Shown here: piece by piece, positions 3,451-64,000 of the stretch
Position numbering within the stretch: position 1 is the first letter of the stretch
How the letters are laid out: each line of letters starts with the position of its first letter
Assembly: GCF_011386835.1 (NCBI RefSeq)
Contig: NC_088806.1
Span: 30,814,001 to 30,878,000 of the forward strand
Length of the DNA: 64,000 nt
Direction of reading: 5' to 3'
Source of the DNA: Chrysemys picta bellii
Lineage: Eukaryota
Translations under genes and position numbers: made by a program
The notes under the pieces: model-generated
Told to the model about the DNA's origin: nothing
The model's database searches: none
Seen by the model: the letters and a program-made list of their open reading frames with translations, nothing else

Positions 3451-18801
<15,351 letters not shown>

Positions 18802-26116: not shown

Positions 26117-45126
<19,010 letters not shown>

Positions 45127-53170: not shown

Positions 53171-53289
53171 GCCCCACATGCATACCTGCTAATTAATCTG
53201 TAATGAGTGAAATTCATTGATCTCTAGCTAAGGACATTGGTTGTGTTTTCACTACTAGGTGCAGTCAGTGTGTCCCCTTATGAATGGAC

Positions 53290-53371
53290 ATGGCAGGACC
53301 CGCTATACGCATTGGGGATCAGCTCATCCTAGAAGAAGATTATGATGAAACATACATACCCAGTGAGCAAG
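53290..53371 (+). CDS. CEP164: CEP164 first coding exon (exon starts 53259)
   Basis: gacATGg at 53290; 82 coding nt; G|GTAACT donor. Confidence 0.95.
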
Positions 53372-56300
53372 GTAACTGGCACCTGCCTTCCTCAGAGCAG
53401 AAAAATTGGGCGTTCAGATATTGCAGGAGAATGGCAAAGCAGGCAGAATGAGTGATGTTCAGTGTGTTGGAGAGTTGAAAAGGTAGCTCGTGTTAGTGAC
53501 ACTCCATCCTGCTGTCGGTAGTGCATCAGTAACAGCCCGTCTCTCAAAGAAATTCTGATCTGCCAGCAAATTCAAGCCGGAGGGGTTGCAAGGCAAATTT
53601 AGAGGTTCGTCCAGTCAGACTGGCAGTGCCCTCACTAAGAAGCGGTGCCGAGTTGGCTCTTGGTTCCATTCCCTTGCAGCCGTTGGGACTGTCACAGAGG
53701 AAACCAGCCACCTGGGGCTGAGCAAGAGAGCCGAGCTCCTTTAGGAAAACGAGGGAGGAGATGGTGTCGGCTAGTGGCTAGAGCGGGACACTGGGATTCA
53801 GGGTTCTTGGGACCTGATTGTCCTCTTCCTTACACTGGTTTTCACTGCAGTAACTCCTTTGACTTCCAGACAGTTAATTCCGATGTATGGCAGTGAAATA
53901 GTAGAATAAGGCTCCTGGTTTCCATTCCCATGGATATACCTCCGTTTGTGGCTGCCTCTGTCTCCCACCCCTGCAGAGTTCAGCCTTGCCTCGCCCATTG
54001 TAAGATGCTCCCTGGCACATAGGCTGCACAGAGCTATAGAAAACATCCCAATTCTAGTGTCTTCAATGAGAGGGTTTCCCAGCACCCCTGGGCTGTACTG
54101 AGCACAGGTTTGCACAGGAATGCACAACCTTGCTTGTCTGCCCCGCACTGTCTTCTACTGACTTTTGTTTCCTCTACTTCTGTTCTACTACAGAAATTCA
54201 GGAGTTTGCCAGGGAGATAGGAATTGACCCTGAGAATGAGCCGGAGTTGATGTGGCTGGCCAGAGAAGGCATTGTGGCTCCTTTACCTCCAGAGTGGAAA
54301 CCATGGTGAGAACTTTAAATCAGCACTATTTCAGTAGATTGCCAATCTCTCCTTGCTAATCCCTCTCTAGGTGCTTGTCAAATAAGTAGGGGAAAGTAGC
54401 CTAGTGGTTGGAGCAGGGGACTGGATATCAGGGCTCCTGGGTTTTATTCCTATCTCTGTAACAAAACCAGTTTGTGATCCTGGGTAAGTCACTTCCCCTC
54501 CATGCCTGTACATGCCCCTGTAAAATGGGGATAATACAATACCGTACTTCACTGGGGTGTGGTGATGCTTAAAGAATGGTGGCAATGCTGCCCTTGCCCT
54601 AGGGAGAGGGAAGAAGTAGTTTGGGAAATGAGCGTGATGGAAGCAGGACTGTACTGTGGGGCAGCTGCTCCCCCATCCTGTGTATTTGGGGCTTTTCTGG
54701 GGCAGCATGCTCCGTTTCTGCTATGCACCAAAGGGAGCCTATGGCCAGCGCTTGTAAAGCCCTATATGTTCCTGAGATGACAGGTTCTGTGGCCACACAC
54801 AGCAGCATTGCTGCCAGCTGTGTGTGCTGATTCGCGGGCACAGAGCTGATGCCCTGACTCTCTCCTGTCTTTGTGTTCTGTTTTCCCCACGTCAGTCAAG
54901 ATATCACTGGCGACATCTATTACTTTAACTTTTCTAATGGCCAGTCCACATGGGACCACCCTTGTGATGAACATTACAGAGAACTTGTGATCCAGGAGCG
55001 GGAGAAGCTTTCGGCTCATGGCAGCATTAAAAAGAAAGACAAGAAGAAGAAAAAAGACAAGAAGGAGAAGAAAGACAAGAAGGAGAGAGAGCCAATGAAA
55101 CCTGCTGCGGTGAGTACACCTGAGGTGCTTGTTAGGGAGGGCCAGGAGAGCCAGCCTGAGCGTAAGTGACCAGCTGCGAGTTGGTAATGGCTGCTACTTA
55201 TTGTGGTATTAGAGGCTAGAATGAATGACTGGCATGAAGTGGCTGTGGGGGGGCTGTGCAGAGGAGCAGATGGAGGCAGGCATAGCATCACTTTTCAATT
55301 ATTGTTCTTTAACTTCATTTTTTAACAACTGGGCCAAATCCCTTAGTAACCTGAGGCCAGAGGAGAAATTGGCTTGTTCAGGGAAGCAGCTACTGTCAGT
55401 TTCACCCTCAAGGTCACTAAACTCAGCACTTGGTTTTCTGTGATGCTCCCAATGACTTTATGGTCTGAGGGGCCGTGAGGTGGAAGGAAGACAGGGCTCA
55501 GTGAATGCTCCCTCCCTCCAGTCTTCCTCTGGGACTGTGGAGTTGCTATGGTTCCAGAGGGGCCCTGTGGTGGCATGAGTAGTTCAGAGCCTCCTTCCTA
55601 AATCAAGTCAAGGCTACTGCAGGGCCCAAAGTGTTTCTTGTTTTGTTTGTGCTGGCCAAGGTTTTCTAGTACATAGTTCTTCCCAATTGACTGGGCCAAG
55701 GTATCAAGATGCTCAGGTGACTTTGAGTTAGACGGGTCAGTGGCACACCCAGAATGTCTCTAGGATCCTCCTGTTTCCTAATGCTTTGCCATACCCACGT
55801 TTGATCACAGGCCCTTGCAGAACATGGGCTCAGAGCCCTGAACTCAAGCCATTCCTCTTACTTCCTGCCTTTCCAGGATGGAGTGATTGCTGTGCTTAGA
55901 TGGTGGGTGGGTGGGTTGTAGAATTTTTGGAGCAGTTTTTCTCATTGGAAGGAACAACCAATGTTATTTATGAAGTAACTGTGCACCTGTTGCTATGGTA
56001 TCTAGGCACCAGGCACAGCCTTAAAAGCAATAGATTCATCTGTTTTGCAGTTGGTTGGCAACAAGAGTAGTCATCCCAATGGCAAACCATTCCTCCCTTT
56101 TCAAATAGAGAGAACTTTCCCAGTTCAACCAGTAATTGGGTAAATGTCAGGCTGATAAGATGTGCCTTGCACCAGACCTTGAAAGCCAACAAACTCTCGG
56201 GGGTAGAATCTTCCAGGCAGGGACCTCCATGGAAAAGGCCCAAGCCTTCAATTTGAGGGACTTCTGATAGTGTTTCTTATTTCAAATGCTCCAAGTACAT

Positions 56301-59300
56301 CCTGTTCCATTTCGTGCTGTAGATGAGTGTATGTATCGGATGTTGTGTATTTTAGTTATCTGCTAATATTTATTTATTTAGGAAATGCAGCCAGAGCCAG
56401 GGATTCTTCCTTCAACATCCTTTTATCGAATGTCCTCTCCCATCCTGTCCTCTGAGTGTGCAAGTCCTGATCTAGATCAGGTTAGCCAGATTAGAAACGA
56501 GGGCTTTCTTAAGAAAGGTAAAGGAAAGACCTCTGAGAGACCACCAGAAACAAGTGACTCAAACAGACAGTTTGCAGGGACTTCACCAAATAAACTGCAG
56601 CCACTTCTCACAGCAAAGTCCAGCAGAACTCACCAGATCTTAGCTGATGTGGAGAAAATTTTAGGAAGAACACCATCTTTTAGCAAATCAGATGTAGACA
56701 ACCAGCAGGGCCAAGACAAGTCTCCAAAAATTGGAGACCAGCCTTGTCTTAGTTTTTCTGACTCGGAGTCTGAAGGTTTAGATGTTGTTAGGACAAAGTC
56801 CATTTCTTATGTGTCAAAGAAATCGTGTTCACAAGACATTGAGAATGGGAGAAGTGTCCTTGATTCCCCCGAGGTTCTGGAGGACACAGGTATGCTCTTT
56901 GTTGAGGAAAAGCTGTCTGACAACCGGAAGAAGGAGGAAATGACAGGAGAGAGTGTCTGTCAGCCTGATGACGGCTTATCAGTCAGAGAAAGATCAACAG
57001 GACCTGGTGGTGATAAAGAAAGAGTCCCAGGTTTATCACAAGCCGATGAAAATGAAGCTTTCTTGACCCCCAGTGCCCCTGACCATATTTTTTACAGCAG
57101 GAAATGTGAAATGATTCTCTTTGATGCCAGTCCCACAGAAGACCTGAGTTTGATGGAGGAGGTTGATGTTCACTGTCCCCAACGAGAGCTGAGGGCACAC
57201 AGCAGAGCAGCTGAGAGCAGAAGGAAGAGAAAACTTCAGGATCAGGCATTGAGTCAAGCCACCAAACATTGTAAGAGCAGTGAGGCTGTTGGCAAGTGTG
57301 AGAGAGAGAGCTCAAAGCAGGCAGAGTTTGTTGAGTCTGAAGGAGCAGGCCTAGAAGCAGCCCCGAGAAAAGACCTATTCGACAGCCCCCCGGCAGTTCC
57401 TGAAGTGACTGCAGATACATTACCCTACACCAGACGGGTAGACGTTTATGCTCCAGCAGGAGCTGATATTTCTGCATCAGAGCCTGTTTCTCTCTCTGCT
57501 GTACAGCACAAAGACAAGGAGAAGGCTAACGGTTTGGGGCCTGATCCTGACAGCAGTGTTACAAGCAATTCAGCTGATCATTTTGCATCACAGATTTTGG
57601 GAGAGGTTGATAACTTCTCCTGGGATCTCCAGAGCTCTCGTGAGTCTGACAGACAGACAGACCTGGTTGCTGCTGTTGCTAAAGGGCCTCTACCCACTCA
57701 CCCTTTCACAGGAACTCTCCCAACTCCCCCACAAAGCTCAGCCAATGGGAAGTCGCAGAGTGACTGTAACTCTGAGGATGAGAAGTTCTATCCGCATGTG
57801 CAGGAAAACGATCAAGTACCTAGTCAGGAACATAGCTGTGTCAGTTTTAACATGAAACTGAGTAGGTCACGTGATGCCCCTGAGAAGAACAATGAGGGCA
57901 GACAAGAAGAAACAGGAGAAGGAGAGCAAAGGACAGAGCCAGTTCCTAGAGGGCTAGAGGCAGATTTGTTCACAGAGGGTTTACAGGTTTCTCCTGGTTG
58001 GCTTTATCGGACAGCTGAGTGCCAGGAAAGCAGCAGGCTCTGTCGACAGGTGGAAGGAGAGTTGACCCAGAGTGGAAAAGTGACTGAGGATTACAGCAAA
58101 CTGGAGCTTTGTGAAGGAGCAGGCAGTAATGAGGTAGGCAGCTTAGACTTAAAAATCCCTCTGTAACAGGTCTGCTGTTCCATTATAAATGAATCTGAGG
58201 AGTTGAGAATGGGCATTTTCTCTCTGCTGAGCTAAGTTTCAGGAGAAAGGGAAATTATCTTCCTGGTGGTAGTCACATGAGCTGATGTGACAGGTATATT
58301 TGGGGGTTTATTAAAGCTTTGAGGTGCAGGATGAAAAATACCCTCCTGCTGACCTTCCTGGCATGGTAAGCTCTACATAACTTACATCCTGGATGAATTC
58401 TACAATAATACAATATTATTTCTGTCTTCTGAACTATCGAACAGGTCACACAGAGCAGTCCATGGATTGGGATTATTACATTTAATTACAAAGTCATCTC
58501 TAGGAGCATCTCCCTTATTTGTTTTCCACTTACTTTGAGGCTTCAGCTGAGATCAGGGCTCATTGTGCTAGCCACTGTCCAAACACAGAACCAGACCCTG
58601 CCCTGAAGAGTGAGCAGTCTAAATAGATAAGATAGACCAATGGTGGGAGGAAGAATGTGTCTTCATTTTACGGACAGAAGCTGAGGCACCAAGAGTGATT
58701 TGGCAAAGGTTATGTAGGGGGTATGAGCGAGCCAGGAATTAAGTTCAATGCCTTAACCACAGGGCCACCCTTTCTGTTAAATTCAGAAAAACAAAGGTTG
58801 CATGAACTTGTTTTCTCATGGAAGTTGAGCGTTAGCACAGTGCCCCTCCTCCCCAGCCTTTTGCAGGTAGGTGCTGCACAAACTTCTTTGAGCAAACCTC
58901 AGTCCTGACCTGAACACCACTGCTGTTGTCTTATGACACATCTTGATAAACTCAAACCAGGTAAATTCATGGGAGAGCAGCAAAGGTGGGATAGACTGGT
59001 GCCATCTCGGAAAGCAGTCTTCTCCCTCTTTCCCCTTCGGCCCCGCTCTTGGGAAACCAAAAGACTCCAAAGTACCCATTAAAAGTGATGCCTCCCTGCA
59101 AAGCTGACCGTGAATCCCGGGGACATGGGAGTACGCAGCAGATGCAAGCAATGCTCTCTGACTGTGTTTTGCTTTGACTATCACGGGACAAACTCTCTCT
59201 GCCCTTCATATCTTGATAAAACAATTCAATCCAAAGTATTCTTGTTTCTTTTTAGAGCTCCCACCTCTTCATTATTAGGACAATTATCCTGGGCTACAAT

Positions 59301-62300
59301 TGCCTTGTTAATTAAACAAAAATCCAGGTAGTATTTAATGTTGGATGACAGGCGCTCAAGCTGTTTTGCTCTGGCCTGCAACTGCATGTGCTTGAAGCTT
59401 GCTCTTCCTCCCCAAGAGGCAGCACAGTTGAGCATCCCCCACTGCTATAAGATGCACTAGTTTTGGGCCATGGTGCTGTCCTCCACTGCATACAGCGGGA
59501 GGTTCCTCGTCGGTGTGAAGTGTGTCCTGGGCTGGCTTGTTCTTTGTTTCATAAGTAATTGCTTCAGTTTAATAAGGACTTGCCAAATCGTGTGTTCCGA
59601 AGAAATAAAATAAAAGGTCATTGTGTGTAATGTTAATGAAGTGCTTTGCTCCCGTATTGCTGGTATCCAGCTGTGACTCCACTGAATTGCTAGCTTCGAT
59701 TTCCAATTACCAGCATGTGGTAGCACCCCCTTAGCTGATAATAACTATGACTATAAATATCAGATAAACTGCAGATTATCCTGAAAGTTTTAATTAGCTG
59801 AATGGAAGTGAGTTTTTCTTGCTGACGGACAACTAACACCCCCAGCTTCACACACACAGTTAATAGCCATCGGTAGAAAATCACTAGTTAAGCCGAGAAT
59901 GTGTAATTTTCACTATAACCATTGATTTGGCAACGGCTTGGTGGAGGAGAGAGCAGTGTGCGTTTATCTTCCTTGCCCGTCCCCCAGTGCGCTAGTGAAT
60001 TAACTGTGTTTTCAGTCTCTAATTTTGTATAAACACCGTGTACAGGAGACTGATCTCCTGACGCCCACGTGCTCTGCTGAAGAAATGCTACAGAGTGGTG
60101 CTGGGAAACCATAGGCGTGTTTGTAGCATGCATTAGTTTCACGTTTACCTTGGGCAGCGTATTGCAAGGTATGTCTTGCTGGATAAAAATTCCACTATGT
60201 AAAATAGAGGTTTGAGATGCTCTGTGGTGGTAACTCAGGTCCTTGGTGGGGGGCCTGTTTGTGTCACTGCTATATGAGAGGATTATTTTCGAGCTAGCCT
60301 AGAGTTTCTCTGCCCACCTTTACAAGTGCAATTAAACTTCGGCTCTTCTGATCAGGTCAGTTGAGTTTGGCATTTTCTCAGCTTGTCCTGTTTGATCTCA
60401 GCCCTTTATGGGACTTACATTTTGTTTAGAGATTCATAGATTCCAAGGCCAGAAGGGACCACTGTGACCATCTAGTCTGACCTCCTGCATGGCACAGGCC
60501 ACAGGACTTCCCCGAGTTAATTCCTGTTCGAGCTAGCGCAGACATTGTAGAAAATCATCTAGTTTTGCTTTAAAAATTCTCAATGACAGAGAATCCACCA
60601 CAGCCTTTGTAAGCTGTTCCAGTGGTAATTACCCTCACTGTTAAAACTGTGTATCTGATTTCCAGTCTGAATTTGTCTAGCTTCAGCTTCCAGCCCTTGG
60701 CTCTTGTTCTGCGTTTGCTGCTAGGCTGAAGAGTGCATTATCAAATATCTGTTCCTCTCGCAGGTACTTACCGACTGTATCACCCTTTAACCTTCTTTTT
60801 ATTAAGCTAAATAGATCGAGCTCCTTGAATTTCTCATGCTAAAATGTTTTCCTGTCCTTTAATAGTTTCCGTGGCTCTTCTCTGACCCCTCTAACTGGGA
60901 TGTAGGAATTATTCTCAGGGTTTTCGCTGTGCAGTAGATGGGAGACACCTCAGTAGAAATTATTAAGAGCCCCTTGGTGAAGTTCTGCAGCAGAATTGCC
61001 TGCCACAATTTTACTTCTCACCCACAGTTGTTGCTGTAGTCCCACCTGCTTATTGCAGCCTCTGTAGGGCAGGAGACTCCTTGCCATCCCAGTGAGACTG
61101 TCCTGCCTTATTCTGCTTAGAATAACAACCAGAAAATGATGAGAACCCCACCCCCTACCCCCAGCCTCCCATGGGTAATTGGAGGGTGAAGCTGCAGTTA
61201 CCCAGGTCCTACGCAATTAGTTAGTTGGGCTGCCGAGCTGTTATCACTTCACATGGGCATCCCTACTCCCCCTCTTCCTGGCCAACGGCTCGAAACTCAA
61301 CAGTGGGGCAATGCTGTCATGGGAGGAACCAGCACAGGGAAGGGTTGTTTCAAGTAACAGCAAGAGTATATTAACCCTTTTAGTTCGTTCTTATTTGAAA
61401 AGTCACGTATTGACATCTGGACAATAATTCATAATAAATGTCACTTCTTTTTCTTTGCTGAGGAAACTGAATTTGTCAGCCATGGTTTCTACTTCAGTTA
61501 TTCAGTGCTGTGCAAAGCAGCAGAGGGGTACAAGAGCGGAAATGCTGTCTGGCCTGATTTTATTAGAATAGTACGGAGGTTCTGACCACCTTCCCAGGCA
61601 TTCATATAATGTTCTTTGTGAATGTGCATCTATTACATTTCTGTATGCCAATATGGGTGTATTATATTTTATCTTCTCCCTGATGTTTTGGTGTTTCTGT
61701 GAATTTTGTGAATCAGGACAAACTCCTGGATGTTGTAAACTAAATAACTCTGTGTTCATATGGGTCATTGGATGGGCTATATGCACGAGTGAATCCACCT
61801 CTTATTCCTCACACATTTGAGTGTTGGGGTCTCGTTAGCAGCTTTCGAGCAGAGGTGGTTTAAGTGGTAGCAGGAAATGTTCAGATAGAAGTGGCTCGTT
61901 ATTTTTGTACCTACTTGCCGACTGTAAATGGCGCCTGCTCTCCTTCTCTTGATCCATCAAAGTTGTGGTCAGATACTTACCTTGTTCTTGCATGTCCTAG
62001 TCTCCAGGTTCCCTGCTAGCACCTGTCCAAGTTCCCCCGGGGAGTCTTGCTCCTTTACGTGGTGTCGTGGATGGTCCAGCCGGTGCCCTCCGTGGCTCGC
62101 TAAGCACCAGTGTGGAGATCTCCAGGGTACCCAGTCCGCTGCTCAGAGAAGGAACTCTGGTAACTCTCCCTCTTCACTGAAAGTTCAGTGTGGGATGTGT
62201 TTGTTGCAATGCGCCATGTTTTCAGGAACCTCCCCAGACAGACACATGCGTCCGACGAAGTGGGTATTCACCCTCGAAAGCTTATGCTCCAATACACCTT

Positions 62301-63840
62301 TTAGTCTCTAAGGTGACACAGGACTCTTTGTTGCTTTTCACAGATCCAGACTAACACGGCTACCCCTCTGATACTAGACACTAGACTGGTGTTTCAAAGG
62401 CAGTATCCCTGTCCCTCGTACATGGTTTTTACCCTGTCTTTGTCTGTGAAGCCATGCTTAGAAATGTGAAATACGTTTCCTGTCTCTACATTTCCCTCTC
62501 CCCCCCCCCCCTACCCCCCATGTTTGTATGAAACCTAGTCCAAAGTGGCAGTGATGCTCTCCAGCCCCCCTGCACTCAGAATGACAATGCTGGTGCATAA
62601 GAGTTGCTCCTCTCTTCCCCACCTTCTAGCTATGGAAGCTCTACATTGGTGCCCATCATTCTAGTATTTGAGCCCCCGTGTGTTAATTCTGCCAGGGAGG
62701 ATCGCGCACTCATTCACTGTGATACTAGGACAGCACAGGTGCCGTCACACTAGTGGCTGAGCAGCTGTTCCCATCTGAGGCTGAAATGAGCTGTTGGGCC
62801 TCAGTCGTGAGGGGAAACATTCACTTTGTAAAATGGCCACTGGCCCCTCATTGGTCACCACAGAGAGGGGAAAGACTAAATGGGCTACAGAGACTGAACT
62901 TCCTTTTGTTTCCCGAGAAGAGGTCCCTCCAGCAGAAAGCTGAGACGCAGGGCTCGTTTACAAGCCGTTACTGTGTGGTGGACCAGGGTGTGAATCTACA
63001 GTGCGCCAACTTGCTGTGCAGTCCTGTCCCAGGTGGACACTGCTACAGCGCACACAAATCCCGGGGGGCCACTTTCAGTGCAGTGTAGCAATGTCCATCA
63101 GGGAGGTTACTGAGTGGCAACTGGTAGGCTGTAGATGCACATGCTGGCTTGTCTCTCAATAACTTGCCATGTAGAGAAGCCCACAGTAGTGGGGGTGGGG
63201 GTGAGAAGCTTTCGTTGCCATCGGTTGTATACCTGTTGGATGGGTATAGAGATCTTGTATCCCCAGAGCTATCAATCTTACACCTTCTACCAGCATCAAA
63301 TTCATCTTAAAAAAGAAAAGAGGGAGGGGGAAGTCGGTTGCAAATCCAGCTTGATTAATTTGTATTTTCTTGGGTGGGGAGATTTTGCATATGTTTCTTT
63401 ACAGTGAGAACACCTTTGATATAATGGAAACTTTTGCCTAAAGCAGAGTTCACCCCCTTGGTAGTCAAGATATATTTGCAATGACTCTCTGCAAAATAAC
63501 CGTGTTTTAGACAGTCAAGTTAGCCTGCATAGTCCTTGACGTTCTGGGTGTTATGCTGACTGTGTGCTACTAAGCTGGTGAGAGAGTCCCTCTACAAGGG
63601 ATGGAATTGGGCTGCCATGCTTTGATATGCCTGAGTGGATGCCTGTATCCTCTTTCCTGTTTGGCTTCGTCTCGTCTAACAACCCTCATCCCCCTTTTTT
63701 TGACTTTGCAGCCTCCACAGACCCTTAAATCCACCGACTGCACTAAGAGCTTGCTGGGATCCGTGCATGAGGAAAAACCCTCCTTAAATCTCCTAGCTCT
63801 AGATGAAGGGGAAAATGAAGAGGAAGAGAGTGAGAATCAG
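53290..63840 (+). CDS. CEP164: Centrosomal protein 164 (distal appendage), 5' part; gene continues beyond the window
   Basis: Exons 53290-53371, 54194-54305, 54896-55109, 56382-58133 (large extra exon), 62001-62159 and 63712-63840; all GT-AG and phase-compatible. [21 protein letters not shown] and the WW domain ([17 protein letters not shown]...WDHP) match CEP164. Confidence 0.96.
54194..54305 (+). CDS. CEP164: CEP164 exon ([25 protein letters not shown]...)
   Basis: 112 nt, conserved peptide. Confidence 0.97.
54385..54570 (+). mobile_element. MIR/CORE-like SINE remnant
   Basis: gtagcctagtggttggagcagggg...ctgggtaagtcacttcccctc...ctgtaaaatggggataata. Confidence 0.6.
54896..55109 (+). CDS. 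CEP164: CEP164 WW-domain and Lys-rich exon
   Basis: [27 protein letters not shown]...; 214 nt. Confidence 0.97.
56382..58133 (+). CDS. CEP164: CEP164 large symmetric exon (584 codons, acidic and Ser-rich, probably disordered)
   Basis: tatttatttag acceptor in frame with ORF 56385-58166; GAG|GTAGGC donor in phase 0. Confidence 0.8.
60428..60895 (-). mobile_element. CR1 LINE 3' fragment
   Basis: gattcatagattccaaggccagaagggaccactgtgaccatctagtctgacctcc. Confidence 0.8.
62001..62159 (+). CDS. CEP164: CEP164 exon ([21 protein letters not shown]...)
   Basis: 159 nt; LAPLRG conserved. Confidence 0.92.
62246..62373 (+). mobile_element. Penelope-like terminal fragment with a hammerhead-like motif (62248-62287)
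   Basis: gcgtccgacgaagtgggtattcaccctcgaaagcttatgc...gactaacacggctacccctctgata. Confidence 0.82.
63712..63840 (+). CDS. CEP164: CEP164 exon (PPQTLKS...EEEESENQ)
   Basis: tttgcag acceptor; CAG|GTAGGA donor; 129 nt. Confidence 0.92.
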
Positions 63841-64000
63841 GTAGGAAAAGAGCTGAGAAACCTGTTAGATTCCTATGAGTGCCGTGTGTTGTTTTTGTGG
63901 GCTGTGCGTAGATCCCCTAAGGGAATCTGGGGAATAGACTCTGATAGTCCTTGCCTCATGAGGGTTTTCAGCCCAGAATGTCCTGTGGTTCAAATGCTTC

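What the first reader, a model, noticed from the sequence alone, without database searches (positions are those of the whole stretch)
56382..58133. Intact 1752-nt cassette-type exon inserting 584 aa after the CEP164 WW/Lys-rich region
Seen: an uninterrupted ORF with a phase 0 acceptor and donor, lying between two exons that I recall being directly joined in the 1460-aa human protein. It is non-repetitive, acidic and Ser-rich, with possible helical islands ([14 protein letters not shown]; [21 protein letters not shown]). An open frame this long is unlikely without selection. Established: the CEP164 N-terminus recruits TTBK2. Inference: a long spacer isoform, possibly tissue-specific, changing distal-appendage reach or adding binding sites.
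Basis: partly seen in the sequence, partly recalled or inferred. Interest (0 to 1): 0.7.

Follow-up and report, generated by a model that had tools for sequence, protein, structure and literature searches.

The report
Known long-isoform exon of CEP164
The 1752-base open frame is a real, very old coding exon of the cilium gene CEP164; gene catalogues already predict it in long isoforms of dozens of vertebrates, but I found no paper that studies it.

Summary
Window 56382-58133 is 584 open codons, bounded by ttAG|GAA and GAG|GTAGGC, with phase 0 at both ends, and it is not repetitive. The window is from a turtle.

The reading "extra exon giving a long CEP164 isoform" is supported by comparison.

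The exon is not new. Long CEP164 models of about 1.8-2.05 kaa carry it in more than 60 species: turtles, crocodilians, a swan, squamates, marsupials, mouse, carnivores, bats and non-human primates. A coelacanth model has it too.

- **Selection between two turtles:** 0 indels against 18 in the flanking introns, no stops, dN/dS about 0.45-0.57.
- **Structure:** AlphaFold2 predicts disorder, apart from one confident short helix ([12 protein letters not shown]) and one weaker helix.
- **Conserved islands:** three sequence islands hold from coelacanth or reptiles to mammals.
- **Annotation error:** NCBI calls the exon a separate "uncharacterized LOC" gene in three genomes. That looks wrong, because the open frame starts at the splice acceptor and conserved coding lies before the first ATG.

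Tissue specificity and function stay untested. Six searches found no paper on the long isoform.

The parts
54896..55109 (+). Upstream CEP164 exon: C-terminal half of the WW domain plus the Lys-rich run. It ends in phase 0 (...PMKPAA|gtgagt).
   Evidence: Pfam WW, E 2.6e-06. Sequence with cAG acceptor and GTGAGT donor. tblastn of Mauremys CEP164 X4, residues 68-143.
56382..58133 (+). The large exon: 1752 nt, 584 codons, phase 0 at both ends. It encodes a mostly disordered, acidic, Ser-rich segment.
   Evidence: It is 91% identical to residues 139-723 of Mauremys mutica CEP164 isoform X4. There are 0 indels against Chelonoidis. AlphaFold2 mean pLDDT is 40.
56360..56381 (+). Polypyrimidine tract and AG acceptor (…tttatttatttAG). 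The TAG of the acceptor is also the in-frame stop that bounds the ORF upstream.
   Evidence: The same arrangement is found in Chelonoidis, kiwi and camel.
58134..58166 (+). Splice donor GTAGGC, followed by 10 read-through codons and TAA.
   Evidence: The GTAGGC hexamer is identical in Chelonoidis and camel. In kiwi GT has changed to AT.
56394..56435 (+). Conserved block 0 ([14 protein letters not shown]), directly after the acceptor.
   Evidence: 30-species alignment, mean column conservation 0.67. In camel it lies upstream of the first ATG.
56583..56675 (+). Island 1: [31 protein letters not shown]. It contains the only confidently predicted helix, at exon residues 82-93.
   Evidence: K71, L72, P74, L75, D89, I93, L94 and G95 are invariant from coelacanth to mammals. 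AlphaFold2 helix with pLDDT about 80; again a helix, pLDDT about 75, in the context of the whole N-terminus.
56748..56774 (+). Acidic Ser cluster LSFSDSESE.
   Evidence: S126 is invariant and D127 nearly so.
57000..57017 (+). Small conserved block GPGGDK.
   Evidence: conservation 0.73. Shared by turtles, kiwi and mammals.
57561..57641 (+). Island 2: ...[23 protein letters not shown].
   Evidence: Conserved in turtles, squamates, marsupials and placentals, and recognisable in coelacanth. It is degraded in crocodilians and swan and absent in kiwi. AlphaFold2 confidence is only about 50.
57741..57803 (+). Island 3: acidic Ser run plus EDxKFYxH. In turtles the basic helix that follows it in squamates and mammals (ILQMVK.SR) is replaced.
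   Evidence: Weak helix at Mauremys residues 605-614, pLDDT about 52.
62001..62159 (+). Next CEP164 exon ([21 protein letters not shown]...REGTL), 159 nt, phase 0 at both ends.
   Evidence: AG at 61999-62000, GTAACT at 62160. The Mauremys X4 and P0105 peptides run ...GAGSNE|[10 protein letters not shown]....
58310..58315 (+). ATTAAA hexamer 177 nt past the donor. It is a possible poly(A) signal for a short read-through isoform. Not tested.

Best explanation
Window 56382-58133 is the turtle copy of a large, ancient, in-frame coding exon of CEP164. Spliced in, it links the exon ending at 55109 to the exon starting at 62001. That adds 584 residues directly after the TTBK2-docking N-terminal domain and the Lys-rich run, and turns a protein of about 1450 aa into one of about 1.9-2.0 kaa.

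The insert is an intrinsically disordered, acidic, Ser-rich linker. It carries three conserved short motifs and a conserved basic patch (RRKRK):
- KLQPL...[14 protein letters not shown], which forms a helix;
- [21 protein letters not shown];
- SESE.YSEDQKFYQH.

Shown here: the open frame, the splice signals, orthology to exons inside annotated long CEP164 isoforms from coelacanth to mammals, purifying selection, and predicted disorder.

Inferred: the islands are isoform-specific docking sites. The Ser/acidic stretches are kinase substrates of the CK1/TTBK2 or CK2 type. The insert lengthens the tether between the TTBK2-binding head and the coiled-coil anchor in the distal appendage. Inclusion is regulated by tissue or stage.
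For: Open frame, splice signals and phase.

Orthology and junctions:
- Mauremys mutica XP_044852905.1 (isoform X4, 1864 aa) holds the exon at residues 139-723, at 91% identity. Its peptides ...MKHAA|EMQPEPG and ...GAGSNE|[10 protein letters not shown] map to the window junctions.
- P0105 is 99% identical to the window over 341 aa and also runs across the donor junction.
- Long CEP164 models with the exon exist in more than 60 species, including Pelodiscus, Alligator, Cygnus, many squamates, Monodelphis and Mus musculus X5/X6. Coelacanth XP_014350805.1 joins it to the next exon.

Selection, window against Chelonoidis:
- 0 indel events in 1752 nt, against 18 in 3432 nt of intron (P about 1e-4).
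- dN/dS 0.44-0.57.
- 68 amino-acid changes against 84 +/- 4.6 expected under the intron substitution spectrum (0 of 3000 simulations as low). About 5 stops expected and none seen (P 0.007).

Splice signals: the acceptor is conserved in turtles, kiwi and camel, and the donor hexamer GTAGGC in turtles and camel.

Structure and context: disorder with one confident helix. The N-terminal domain (residues 1-109) is the TTBK2-binding module, and disordered regions are proposed to aid substrate access (PMC8752127).
Against:
- The 14 small runs that hold the exon are only guessed to be RNA.
- Overall nucleotide identity of the exon between the two turtles (93.3%) is no higher than that of its flanking introns (94.3-94.5%). 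Constraint is therefore moderate and concentrated in the reading frame and the islands.
- NCBI skips the exon in its CEP164 models for Chelonoidis, camel and kiwi.
- In archosaurs the islands are eroded, and kiwi has lost the GT donor and about 250 codons. The exon is therefore dispensable in some lineages.
- No partner, phosphosite or localisation datum supports the proposed function.
Confidence: 0.85

Rival explanations
1. The ORF is a separate single-exon gene nested in a CEP164 intron, as NCBI annotates it: 'uncharacterized protein LOC142047889' in Chelonoidis, LOC135319907 in camel, and an unnamed protein in kiwi.
For: Three RefSeq or GenBank annotations call it so. Their models read through the donor to the next stop.
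Against: - In all four genomes examined the open frame starts exactly at the tAG|GAA acceptor.
- The conserved peptide ETQPEQGLLPPSSF of camel lies upstream of its first ATG. The Met at residue 2 in turtles is Val, Thr or Pro in squamates and mammals, so there is no conserved start codon.
- The donor hexamer is conserved between turtle and camel.
- Dozens of models join the exon to CEP164 exons on both sides.
Confidence: 0.03
2. The exon mainly serves other transcript forms, which may coexist with the cassette form. One is an alternative last exon: WW domain, Lys-rich run and 584 aa plus a 10-residue tail, ended at a nearby poly(A) site. The other is a transcript that starts inside or just before the exon and gives a CEP164 without its WW domain, beginning at Met244 (window 57111).
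For: - The frame closes 10 codons past the donor, and ATTAAA lies at 58310.
- The NCBI LOC models read through the donor.
- Dermochelys X12, Caretta X9 and P0105 (99% identical to the window) start inside the exon and continue into downstream CEP164 exons.
- Thamnophis LOC116516848 is WW domain plus partial exon only.
Against: - Such models often reflect broken RNA-seq coverage rather than true transcript ends.
- The read-through tail is not conserved: turtle [10 protein letters not shown], camel VGFLESMACGPQ.
- Full-length models with both junctions dominate.
Confidence: 0.25
3. In turtles the exon is constitutive, or the major form, rather than a cassette exon. The short form is then the exception.
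For: The only Carettochelys model (1970 aa) contains it. So do Mauremys X2 and X4 and Pelodiscus X3. In squamates all listed isoforms of Rhineura, Pogona and Anolis sagrei contain it.
Against: The Chelonoidis CEP164 model of 1492 aa spans the exon without using it. Isoform numbering says nothing about abundance. No reads were available.
Confidence: 0.3
4. The frame is a relic with no present function in this lineage, kept open by chance or by slow turtle evolution.
For: Substitution rate in the exon is as high as in the flanking introns. Birds show real decay.
Against: No indel and no stop, where about 9 and about 5 are expected, and fewer amino-acid changes than in all 3000 neutral simulations. 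The frame is also open in turtles that diverged far earlier (Pelodiscus, Carettochelys) and in mammals.
Confidence: 0.04

Closest known systems
RefSeq and Ensembl predicted long CEP164 isoforms, for example Mauremys mutica XP_044852905.1 (X4, 1864 aa) and X2 (2010 aa), Mus musculus isoforms X5 and X6 (1886 and 1838 aa), and Vombatus ursinus A0A4X2MDR3
   Same: Same gene, same position after the Lys-rich run, same junction peptides and same conserved islands. The exon is 91% identical to that of Mauremys.
   Different: Nothing structural; this is the orthologous exon in another turtle. Those models are computational predictions. I found no paper that studies the isoform. A 2020 paper still calls the 1460-aa protein the largest isoform (PMC6986751).
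RPGR ORF15, a large, acidic, disordered alternative exon of a ciliary disease gene (named in PMC8037643, listed; its properties are from my own knowledge)
   Same: A long, alternatively used, low-complexity acidic coding exon in a cilium gene that is absent from the 'default' isoform.
   Different: ORF15 is a repetitive Glu/Gly-rich terminal exon formed by intron retention. The CEP164 exon is non-repetitive, internal, and carries discrete conserved motifs.
Giant alternative exons of ankyrin-G and ankyrin-B, and exon 4a of 'big tau' (from my own knowledge, not tested here)
   Same: A single very large, in-frame internal exon that inserts hundreds to thousands of disordered residues and lengthens a scaffold protein.
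   Different: Unrelated sequences. Those exons are neuron-specific with shown functions. For CEP164 neither the tissue nor the function is known.
BRCA1 exon 11 region (nearest clusters in the ESM Atlas feature search, score 0.88-0.89)
   Same: Resemblance by language-model features only: a large, fast-evolving, Ser/Glu-rich vertebrate disordered region encoded by one big exon.
   Different: The score is below the tool's 0.9 lead threshold. There is no sequence homology: the Pfam scan gave nothing and the PDB profile search gave nothing. It is a likeness of type, not kinship.

Membership tests
CEP164 long-isoform exon (as in the RefSeq XP models) | Lies between the WW/Lys-rich exon and the exon encoding ...SLAPVQ.P.G.LAPLRG | tested here: met
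   Exon map from tblastn of Mauremys X4 on the window: 54897-55109, 56382-58133, 62001 onwards. Sequences.
CEP164 long-isoform exon (as in the RefSeq XP models) | Sequence homology over the full length to the exon inside annotated long isoforms | tested here: met
   91% to Mauremys residues 139-723, and E about 1e-30 to 1e-60 to squamate, marsupial and placental models.
CEP164 long-isoform exon (as in the RefSeq XP models) | AG and GT boundaries, with a length that keeps the frame whether the exon is included or skipped | tested here: met
   ttAG|GAA and GAG|GTAGGC. The length is 1752 = 3 x 584, and both neighbouring exon edges are phase 0.
CEP164 long-isoform exon (as in the RefSeq XP models) | Spliced transcripts in this species | not testable with these tools
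The runs that hold the exon are only guessed to be RNA.
Cassette (alternatively skipped) exon | Both inclusion and skipping forms exist | tested here: inconclusive
   Inclusion models: Mauremys, mouse X5/X6 and others. Skipping models: Chelonoidis 1492 aa, camel 1482 aa and kiwi 1371 aa, all spanning the exon, and the mouse 1333-aa and human 1460-aa proteins in the literature. Both forms are annotated for mouse. For this turtle nothing was measured.
Standalone nested protein-coding gene (NCBI LOC models) | A conserved start codon ahead of all conserved coding sequence | tested here: not met
   The frame opens at the acceptor. Conserved residues precede camel's first ATG, and the Met at residue 2 is not conserved.
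Folded protein domain | A confident predicted fold, or a Pfam or PDB match | tested here: not met
   Pfam gave no hit above noise and the PDB profile search gave 0 hits. AlphaFold2 mean pLDDT was 40 and 43, with only short helices.

The most novel reading that the evidence does not exclude
The long CEP164 proteoform is a functionally distinct, regulated isoform. Its three motifs have been conserved since before tetrapods and recruit partners, or tune TTBK2 action, at distal appendages of particular cell types. Because the reference transcript lacks the exon, both cilium biology and ciliopathy variant interpretation have overlooked about 550 coding residues, as once happened with RPGR ORF15.
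Probability: 0.4. Interest if true: 0.6.

Novelty: already known. Interest (0 to 1): 0.3.

Why it matters
CEP164 is the distal-appendage protein that brings TTBK2 to the mother centriole, and it is a nephronophthisis (NPHP15) gene. Experimental work uses the 1460-aa human or 1333-aa mouse protein.

An exon of about 1.7 kb with motifs conserved from coelacanth to mammals sits right behind the TTBK2-binding head. It suggests a second proteoform that no searchable paper has examined. If that proteoform is expressed in specific ciliated tissues, it would offer new binding motifs to test. It would also add coding sequence that variant screens based on the reference transcript do not read.

For the scan itself the result is ordinary. 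The exon is already predicted in public annotation. The main practical by-product is that the 'uncharacterized LOC' genes nested in CEP164 of Chelonoidis, camel and kiwi are most likely this exon mis-called as a gene.

Tried and rejected
- **Reads.** I sent those places to no search tool afterwards. Local scripts stopped at 59700, restarted at 59850, or masked them with N.
- **Exact look-up.** Looking up the window's own 593-aa ORF in assembled contigs gave nothing on record.
- **Pfam.** The exon gave only a 13-bit noise hit to a zinc-finger family.
- **PDB.** A profile search gave 0 hits.
- **ESM Atlas.** The best hits were BRCA1 exon-11 fragments at 0.89, below the lead threshold. I treat this as likeness of type only.
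- **Unnamed hits.** Cluster names for unnamed Logan, ENA and JGI hits (P0003, P0004, P0042 and others) carried no name. Some could come from human-derived contigs, so I neither fetched nor analysed them.
- **Human locus.** I listed ape models but left them out of the alignments.
- **Literature.** Six full-text searches found no paper on a long CEP164 isoform. The CEP164 cassette exon affected by U2AF1 S34F (PMC5077151) is not identified there as this exon.
- **Joined model.** Natural database proteins (Mauremys X2 and X4) stood in for it.
- **LIR motif.** I considered an LC3-interacting motif for ...NFSWDLQ.... The spacing does not fit [WFY]xx[LIV], so I dropped the idea.
- **Other ORFs.** Other long ORFs in the window (33.2-36.9 kb and 1.5-2.4 kb) gave no Pfam family above threshold.
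Full report
**1. The observation**

The ORF list shows one outstanding open frame on the + strand, 56385..58166, 593 aa.
- It is preceded by a pyrimidine-rich tract ending in ttAG (AG at 56380-81). It is followed by GTAGGC at 58134. The frame closes 10 codons later.
- It is the longest stop-free stretch in the 64-kb window; the next longest is 418 codons. Given the exon's base composition, 584 open codons have a chance of about 5e-15.
- It is not repetitive: there are only 15-nt and 19-nt micro-repeats.
- Its product is Ser-rich (13%) and acidic, with net charge -34.

The upstream exon, 54896-55109, encodes the second half of the WW domain and the Lys-rich run, and ends in phase 0. The next exon runs 62001-62159 and begins [21 protein letters not shown].

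**2. What it is**

A word search with the exon's product gave 88% identity to an 'uncharacterized protein LOC142047889' of the tortoise Chelonoidis abingdonii. The window is therefore from a turtle. Weaker but clear matches came from kiwi, geckos, iguanians, snakes, camel and a bat. Several of these are attached to a WW domain.

An exhaustive HMMER scan of cluster representatives found the same segment inside full-length proteins. Their names settle the matter:
- Mauremys mutica 'centrosomal protein of 164 kDa isoform X4' (XP_044852905.1, 1864 aa), with the exon at residues 139-723 and 91% identity.
- CEP164 isoforms of Sphaerodactylus, Rhineura, Pogona and Anolis sagrei.
- A wombat CEP164 of 1751 aa.
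- Isoforms X4 and X7 of a leaf monkey.
- A coelacanth fragment, misnamed 'myosin-1-like', that continues into the next CEP164 exon.

Mapping Mauremys X4 back on the window gives the exon chain 53284-53370, 54160-54303, 54897-55109, 56382-58133, 62001 onwards, 63712-63840. Its junction peptides are ...MKHAA|EMQPEPG and ...GAGSNE|[10 protein letters not shown].

A second word search used the Mauremys protein with the exon as the scored region. It listed long CEP164 models (about 1.8-2.05 kaa) in more than 60 species:
- turtles: Mauremys X2 and X4, Pelodiscus X3, Carettochelys;
- crocodilians: Alligator X2, Crocodylus X1;
- a bird: Cygnus X1;
- many squamates;
- marsupials: Monodelphis, Notamacropus;
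- placentals: Mus musculus X5 and X6, hamsters, pika, bears, cats, bats, sloth, mole, manatee, mouse lemur, marmoset, macaque and great apes.

An HMM built from my alignment places the segment at about residues 130-700 in all of them. One protein, P0105, is 99% identical to the window over 341 residues and also runs across the donor junction into the next exons.

The natural Mauremys proteins served that purpose.

**3. Not a nested gene**

NCBI annotates the ORF as a separate protein-coding locus inside CEP164 in Chelonoidis, camel and kiwi, and the CEP164 models there skip it. Several facts contradict that reading:
- In all three genomes and in the window, the open frame begins exactly at the tAG|GAA acceptor, behind a pyrimidine tract.
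- In camel the conserved peptide ETQPEQGLLPPSSF... lies upstream of the first ATG.
- The Met at residue 2 of the turtle exon is Val, Thr or Pro in squamates and mammals.
- The donor hexamer GTAGGC is identical in the two turtles and in camel.

A standalone gene would not keep a splice acceptor, a splice donor and coding sequence ahead of its start codon for over 300 million years.

**4. Selection**

I compared the window with the Chelonoidis locus.
- The exon is 93.3% identical with no gap. The flanking introns are 94.3-94.5% identical with 41 and 29 gap columns.
- Counted as events, there are 0 indels in 1752 nt against 18 in 3432 nt of intron. About 9.2 are expected, so P(0) is about 1e-4.
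- dN/dS is 0.44-0.57 by four methods. Mismatches by codon position are 28, 39 and 51.
- I placed 118 substitutions at random using the intron substitution spectrum. This gives 84 +/- 4.6 amino-acid changes against 68 observed; 0 of 3000 simulations were that low. It also gives about 5 stops against none observed (P 0.007).

Constraint is therefore real but moderate, as expected for a disordered region.

The stronger argument is depth. In a 30-species alignment the blocks below stand out against poorly conserved linkers:

| Block | Exon residues | Sequence in the window |
|---|---|---|
| 0 | 5-18 | [14 protein letters not shown] |
| Island 1 | 68-98 | [31 protein letters not shown] |
| Acidic Ser cluster | 123-131 | LSFSDSESE |
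| Small block | 207-212 | GPGGDK |
| Island 2 | 394-420 | ...[23 protein letters not shown] |
| Island 3 | 454-474 | SxSxC.SEDxKFYxH |

K71, L72, P74, L75, D89, I93, L94 and G95 are invariant from coelacanth to mammals. A basic patch (RRKRK in turtles, RRRRE in mammals) is also kept in kind.

**5. Structure**

AlphaFold2 on the exon with a 15-sequence alignment gives mean pLDDT 40 and a single confident helix at residues 82-93 ([12 protein letters not shown], pLDDT about 80).

I also folded the first 763 residues of Mauremys X2 with 19 orthologues. The WW and helical head folds (pLDDT 60-78). Island 1 is again a helix (pLDDT about 75). A second, weak helix appears over island 3 (pLDDT about 52). 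Everything else is disordered.

There is no Pfam family and no PDB relative. The nearest ESM-Atlas clusters are BRCA1 exon-11 fragments at 0.89, a likeness of type below the tool's threshold.

**6. How it most likely works**

Published background: residues 1-109 of CEP164 form the TTBK2-binding module, a WW domain inserted in a three-helix bundle. Disordered regions of CEP164 and TTBK2 are proposed to help the kinase reach substrates (PMC8752127).

Shown here: the exon inserts about 580 disordered, acidic, Ser-rich residues with short conserved motifs directly behind that module.

Inferred:
- The long form carries extra docking motifs: an amphipathic helix, an acidic-aromatic motif and acidic Ser clusters.
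- It offers many candidate CK1/TTBK2-type or CK2-type phosphorylation sites.
- It lengthens the tether between the head and the coiled-coil anchor.

I could not test whether inclusion is tissue-specific.

**7. Other transcript forms**

RefSeq isoforms of Dermochelys (X12) and Caretta (X9), and P0105, begin inside the exon at the Met equivalent to window residue 244. They continue into downstream exons. This would give a CEP164 without its TTBK2-binding head.

The NCBI LOC models read through the donor, and an ATTAAA lies 177 nt past it. These may be real minor forms or artefacts of patchy RNA-seq coverage. I give them about 0.25 as additional products.

**8. Lineage differences**

In crocodilians and the swan the islands are eroded. 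Kiwi lacks about 250 codons including island 2, and its donor GT is now AT. A phase-0 GAG|GTTAGT lies 8 codons upstream.

In turtles island 3 has lost the basic helix that follows it in squamates and mammals.

No amphibian, teleost or shark protein appeared among the hits.

**9. Reads**

The look-up of sequencing runs listed 14 small runs (56-226 M letters) from five studies of two organisms. They hold 64-95% of the exon's sampled words, but are only guessed to be RNA. Four runs of about 2000 M letters look like whole-genome DNA.

No junction or tissue evidence could be obtained. I sent those places to no search tool afterwards.

**10. Novelty**

At the level of sequence databases the isoform is already predicted many times over, including for a related turtle with identical junctions.

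At the level of papers I found nothing in six full-text searches. A 2020 CEP164 paper states that the largest isoform encodes 1460 aa, with a 1455-aa alternative, and gives mouse as 1333 aa (PMC6986751).

Subscription journals are largely outside the library, so absence there is not proven.

**11. Verdict**

It is unproven for tissue specificity and function.
- The exon is already annotated, so I class it as 'already known'.
- Interest is modest (0.3). The value lies in pointing to an unstudied, deeply conserved proteoform of a ciliopathy gene, and in a recurrent annotation error (the nested 'LOC' genes).

Noticed in passing
L001:10001-11806 (Chelonoidis), L002:6001-7596 (camel), L003:6001-7002 (kiwi): NCBI annotates the CEP164 large exon as an independent 'uncharacterized protein' gene nested in CEP164, and the CEP164 model skips it. 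The frame opens at the splice acceptor and conserved coding precedes the first ATG, so these LOC genes look like mis-called exons.
   Followed up: yes
L003:~6960-7002 (kiwi); swan and crocodilian proteins P0110, P0108, P0109: The exon is decaying in archosaurs. Kiwi has lost about 250 codons including island 2, and its donor GT is AT, with a phase-0 GTTAGT 8 codons upstream. In swan and crocodilians islands 1-3 are eroded.
   Followed up: partly
window 57111 (Met244 of the exon); proteins P0105, P0106, P0107: RefSeq isoforms of two sea turtles, and a protein 99% identical to the window, start inside the exon and run on into downstream CEP164 exons. This hints at an internal transcription start that would give a CEP164 without its WW domain, or at incomplete transcript evidence.
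   Followed up: partly
window 55110-56381 and 58134-59700, compared with 53650-54850 and 59850-64000: The introns flanking the big exon are 94.3-94.5% identical to Chelonoidis. Introns further away are 88.8-91.7% identical. dS in the exon (0.10-0.13) exceeds the flanking-intron divergence (about 0.056). Raised conservation of flanking introns is typical of regulated alternative exons, but I did not test it further.
   Followed up: no
window 33272-36860 (+): There are several long ORFs (242-413 aa), partly overlapping in two frames, with no Pfam family above threshold. The only hit is a sub-threshold 20-bit match to FAP206. Probably a compositional effect; left unexplained.
   Followed up: partly
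L003:1-570 (-), kiwi: An aspartyl-protease gene (Pfam Asp, TAXi_C) lies head-to-head upstream of kiwi CEP164. This fits the BACE1-CEP164 neighbourhood that I recall from mammals.
   Followed up: no
I left it out of all later searches and alignments.
   Followed up: no
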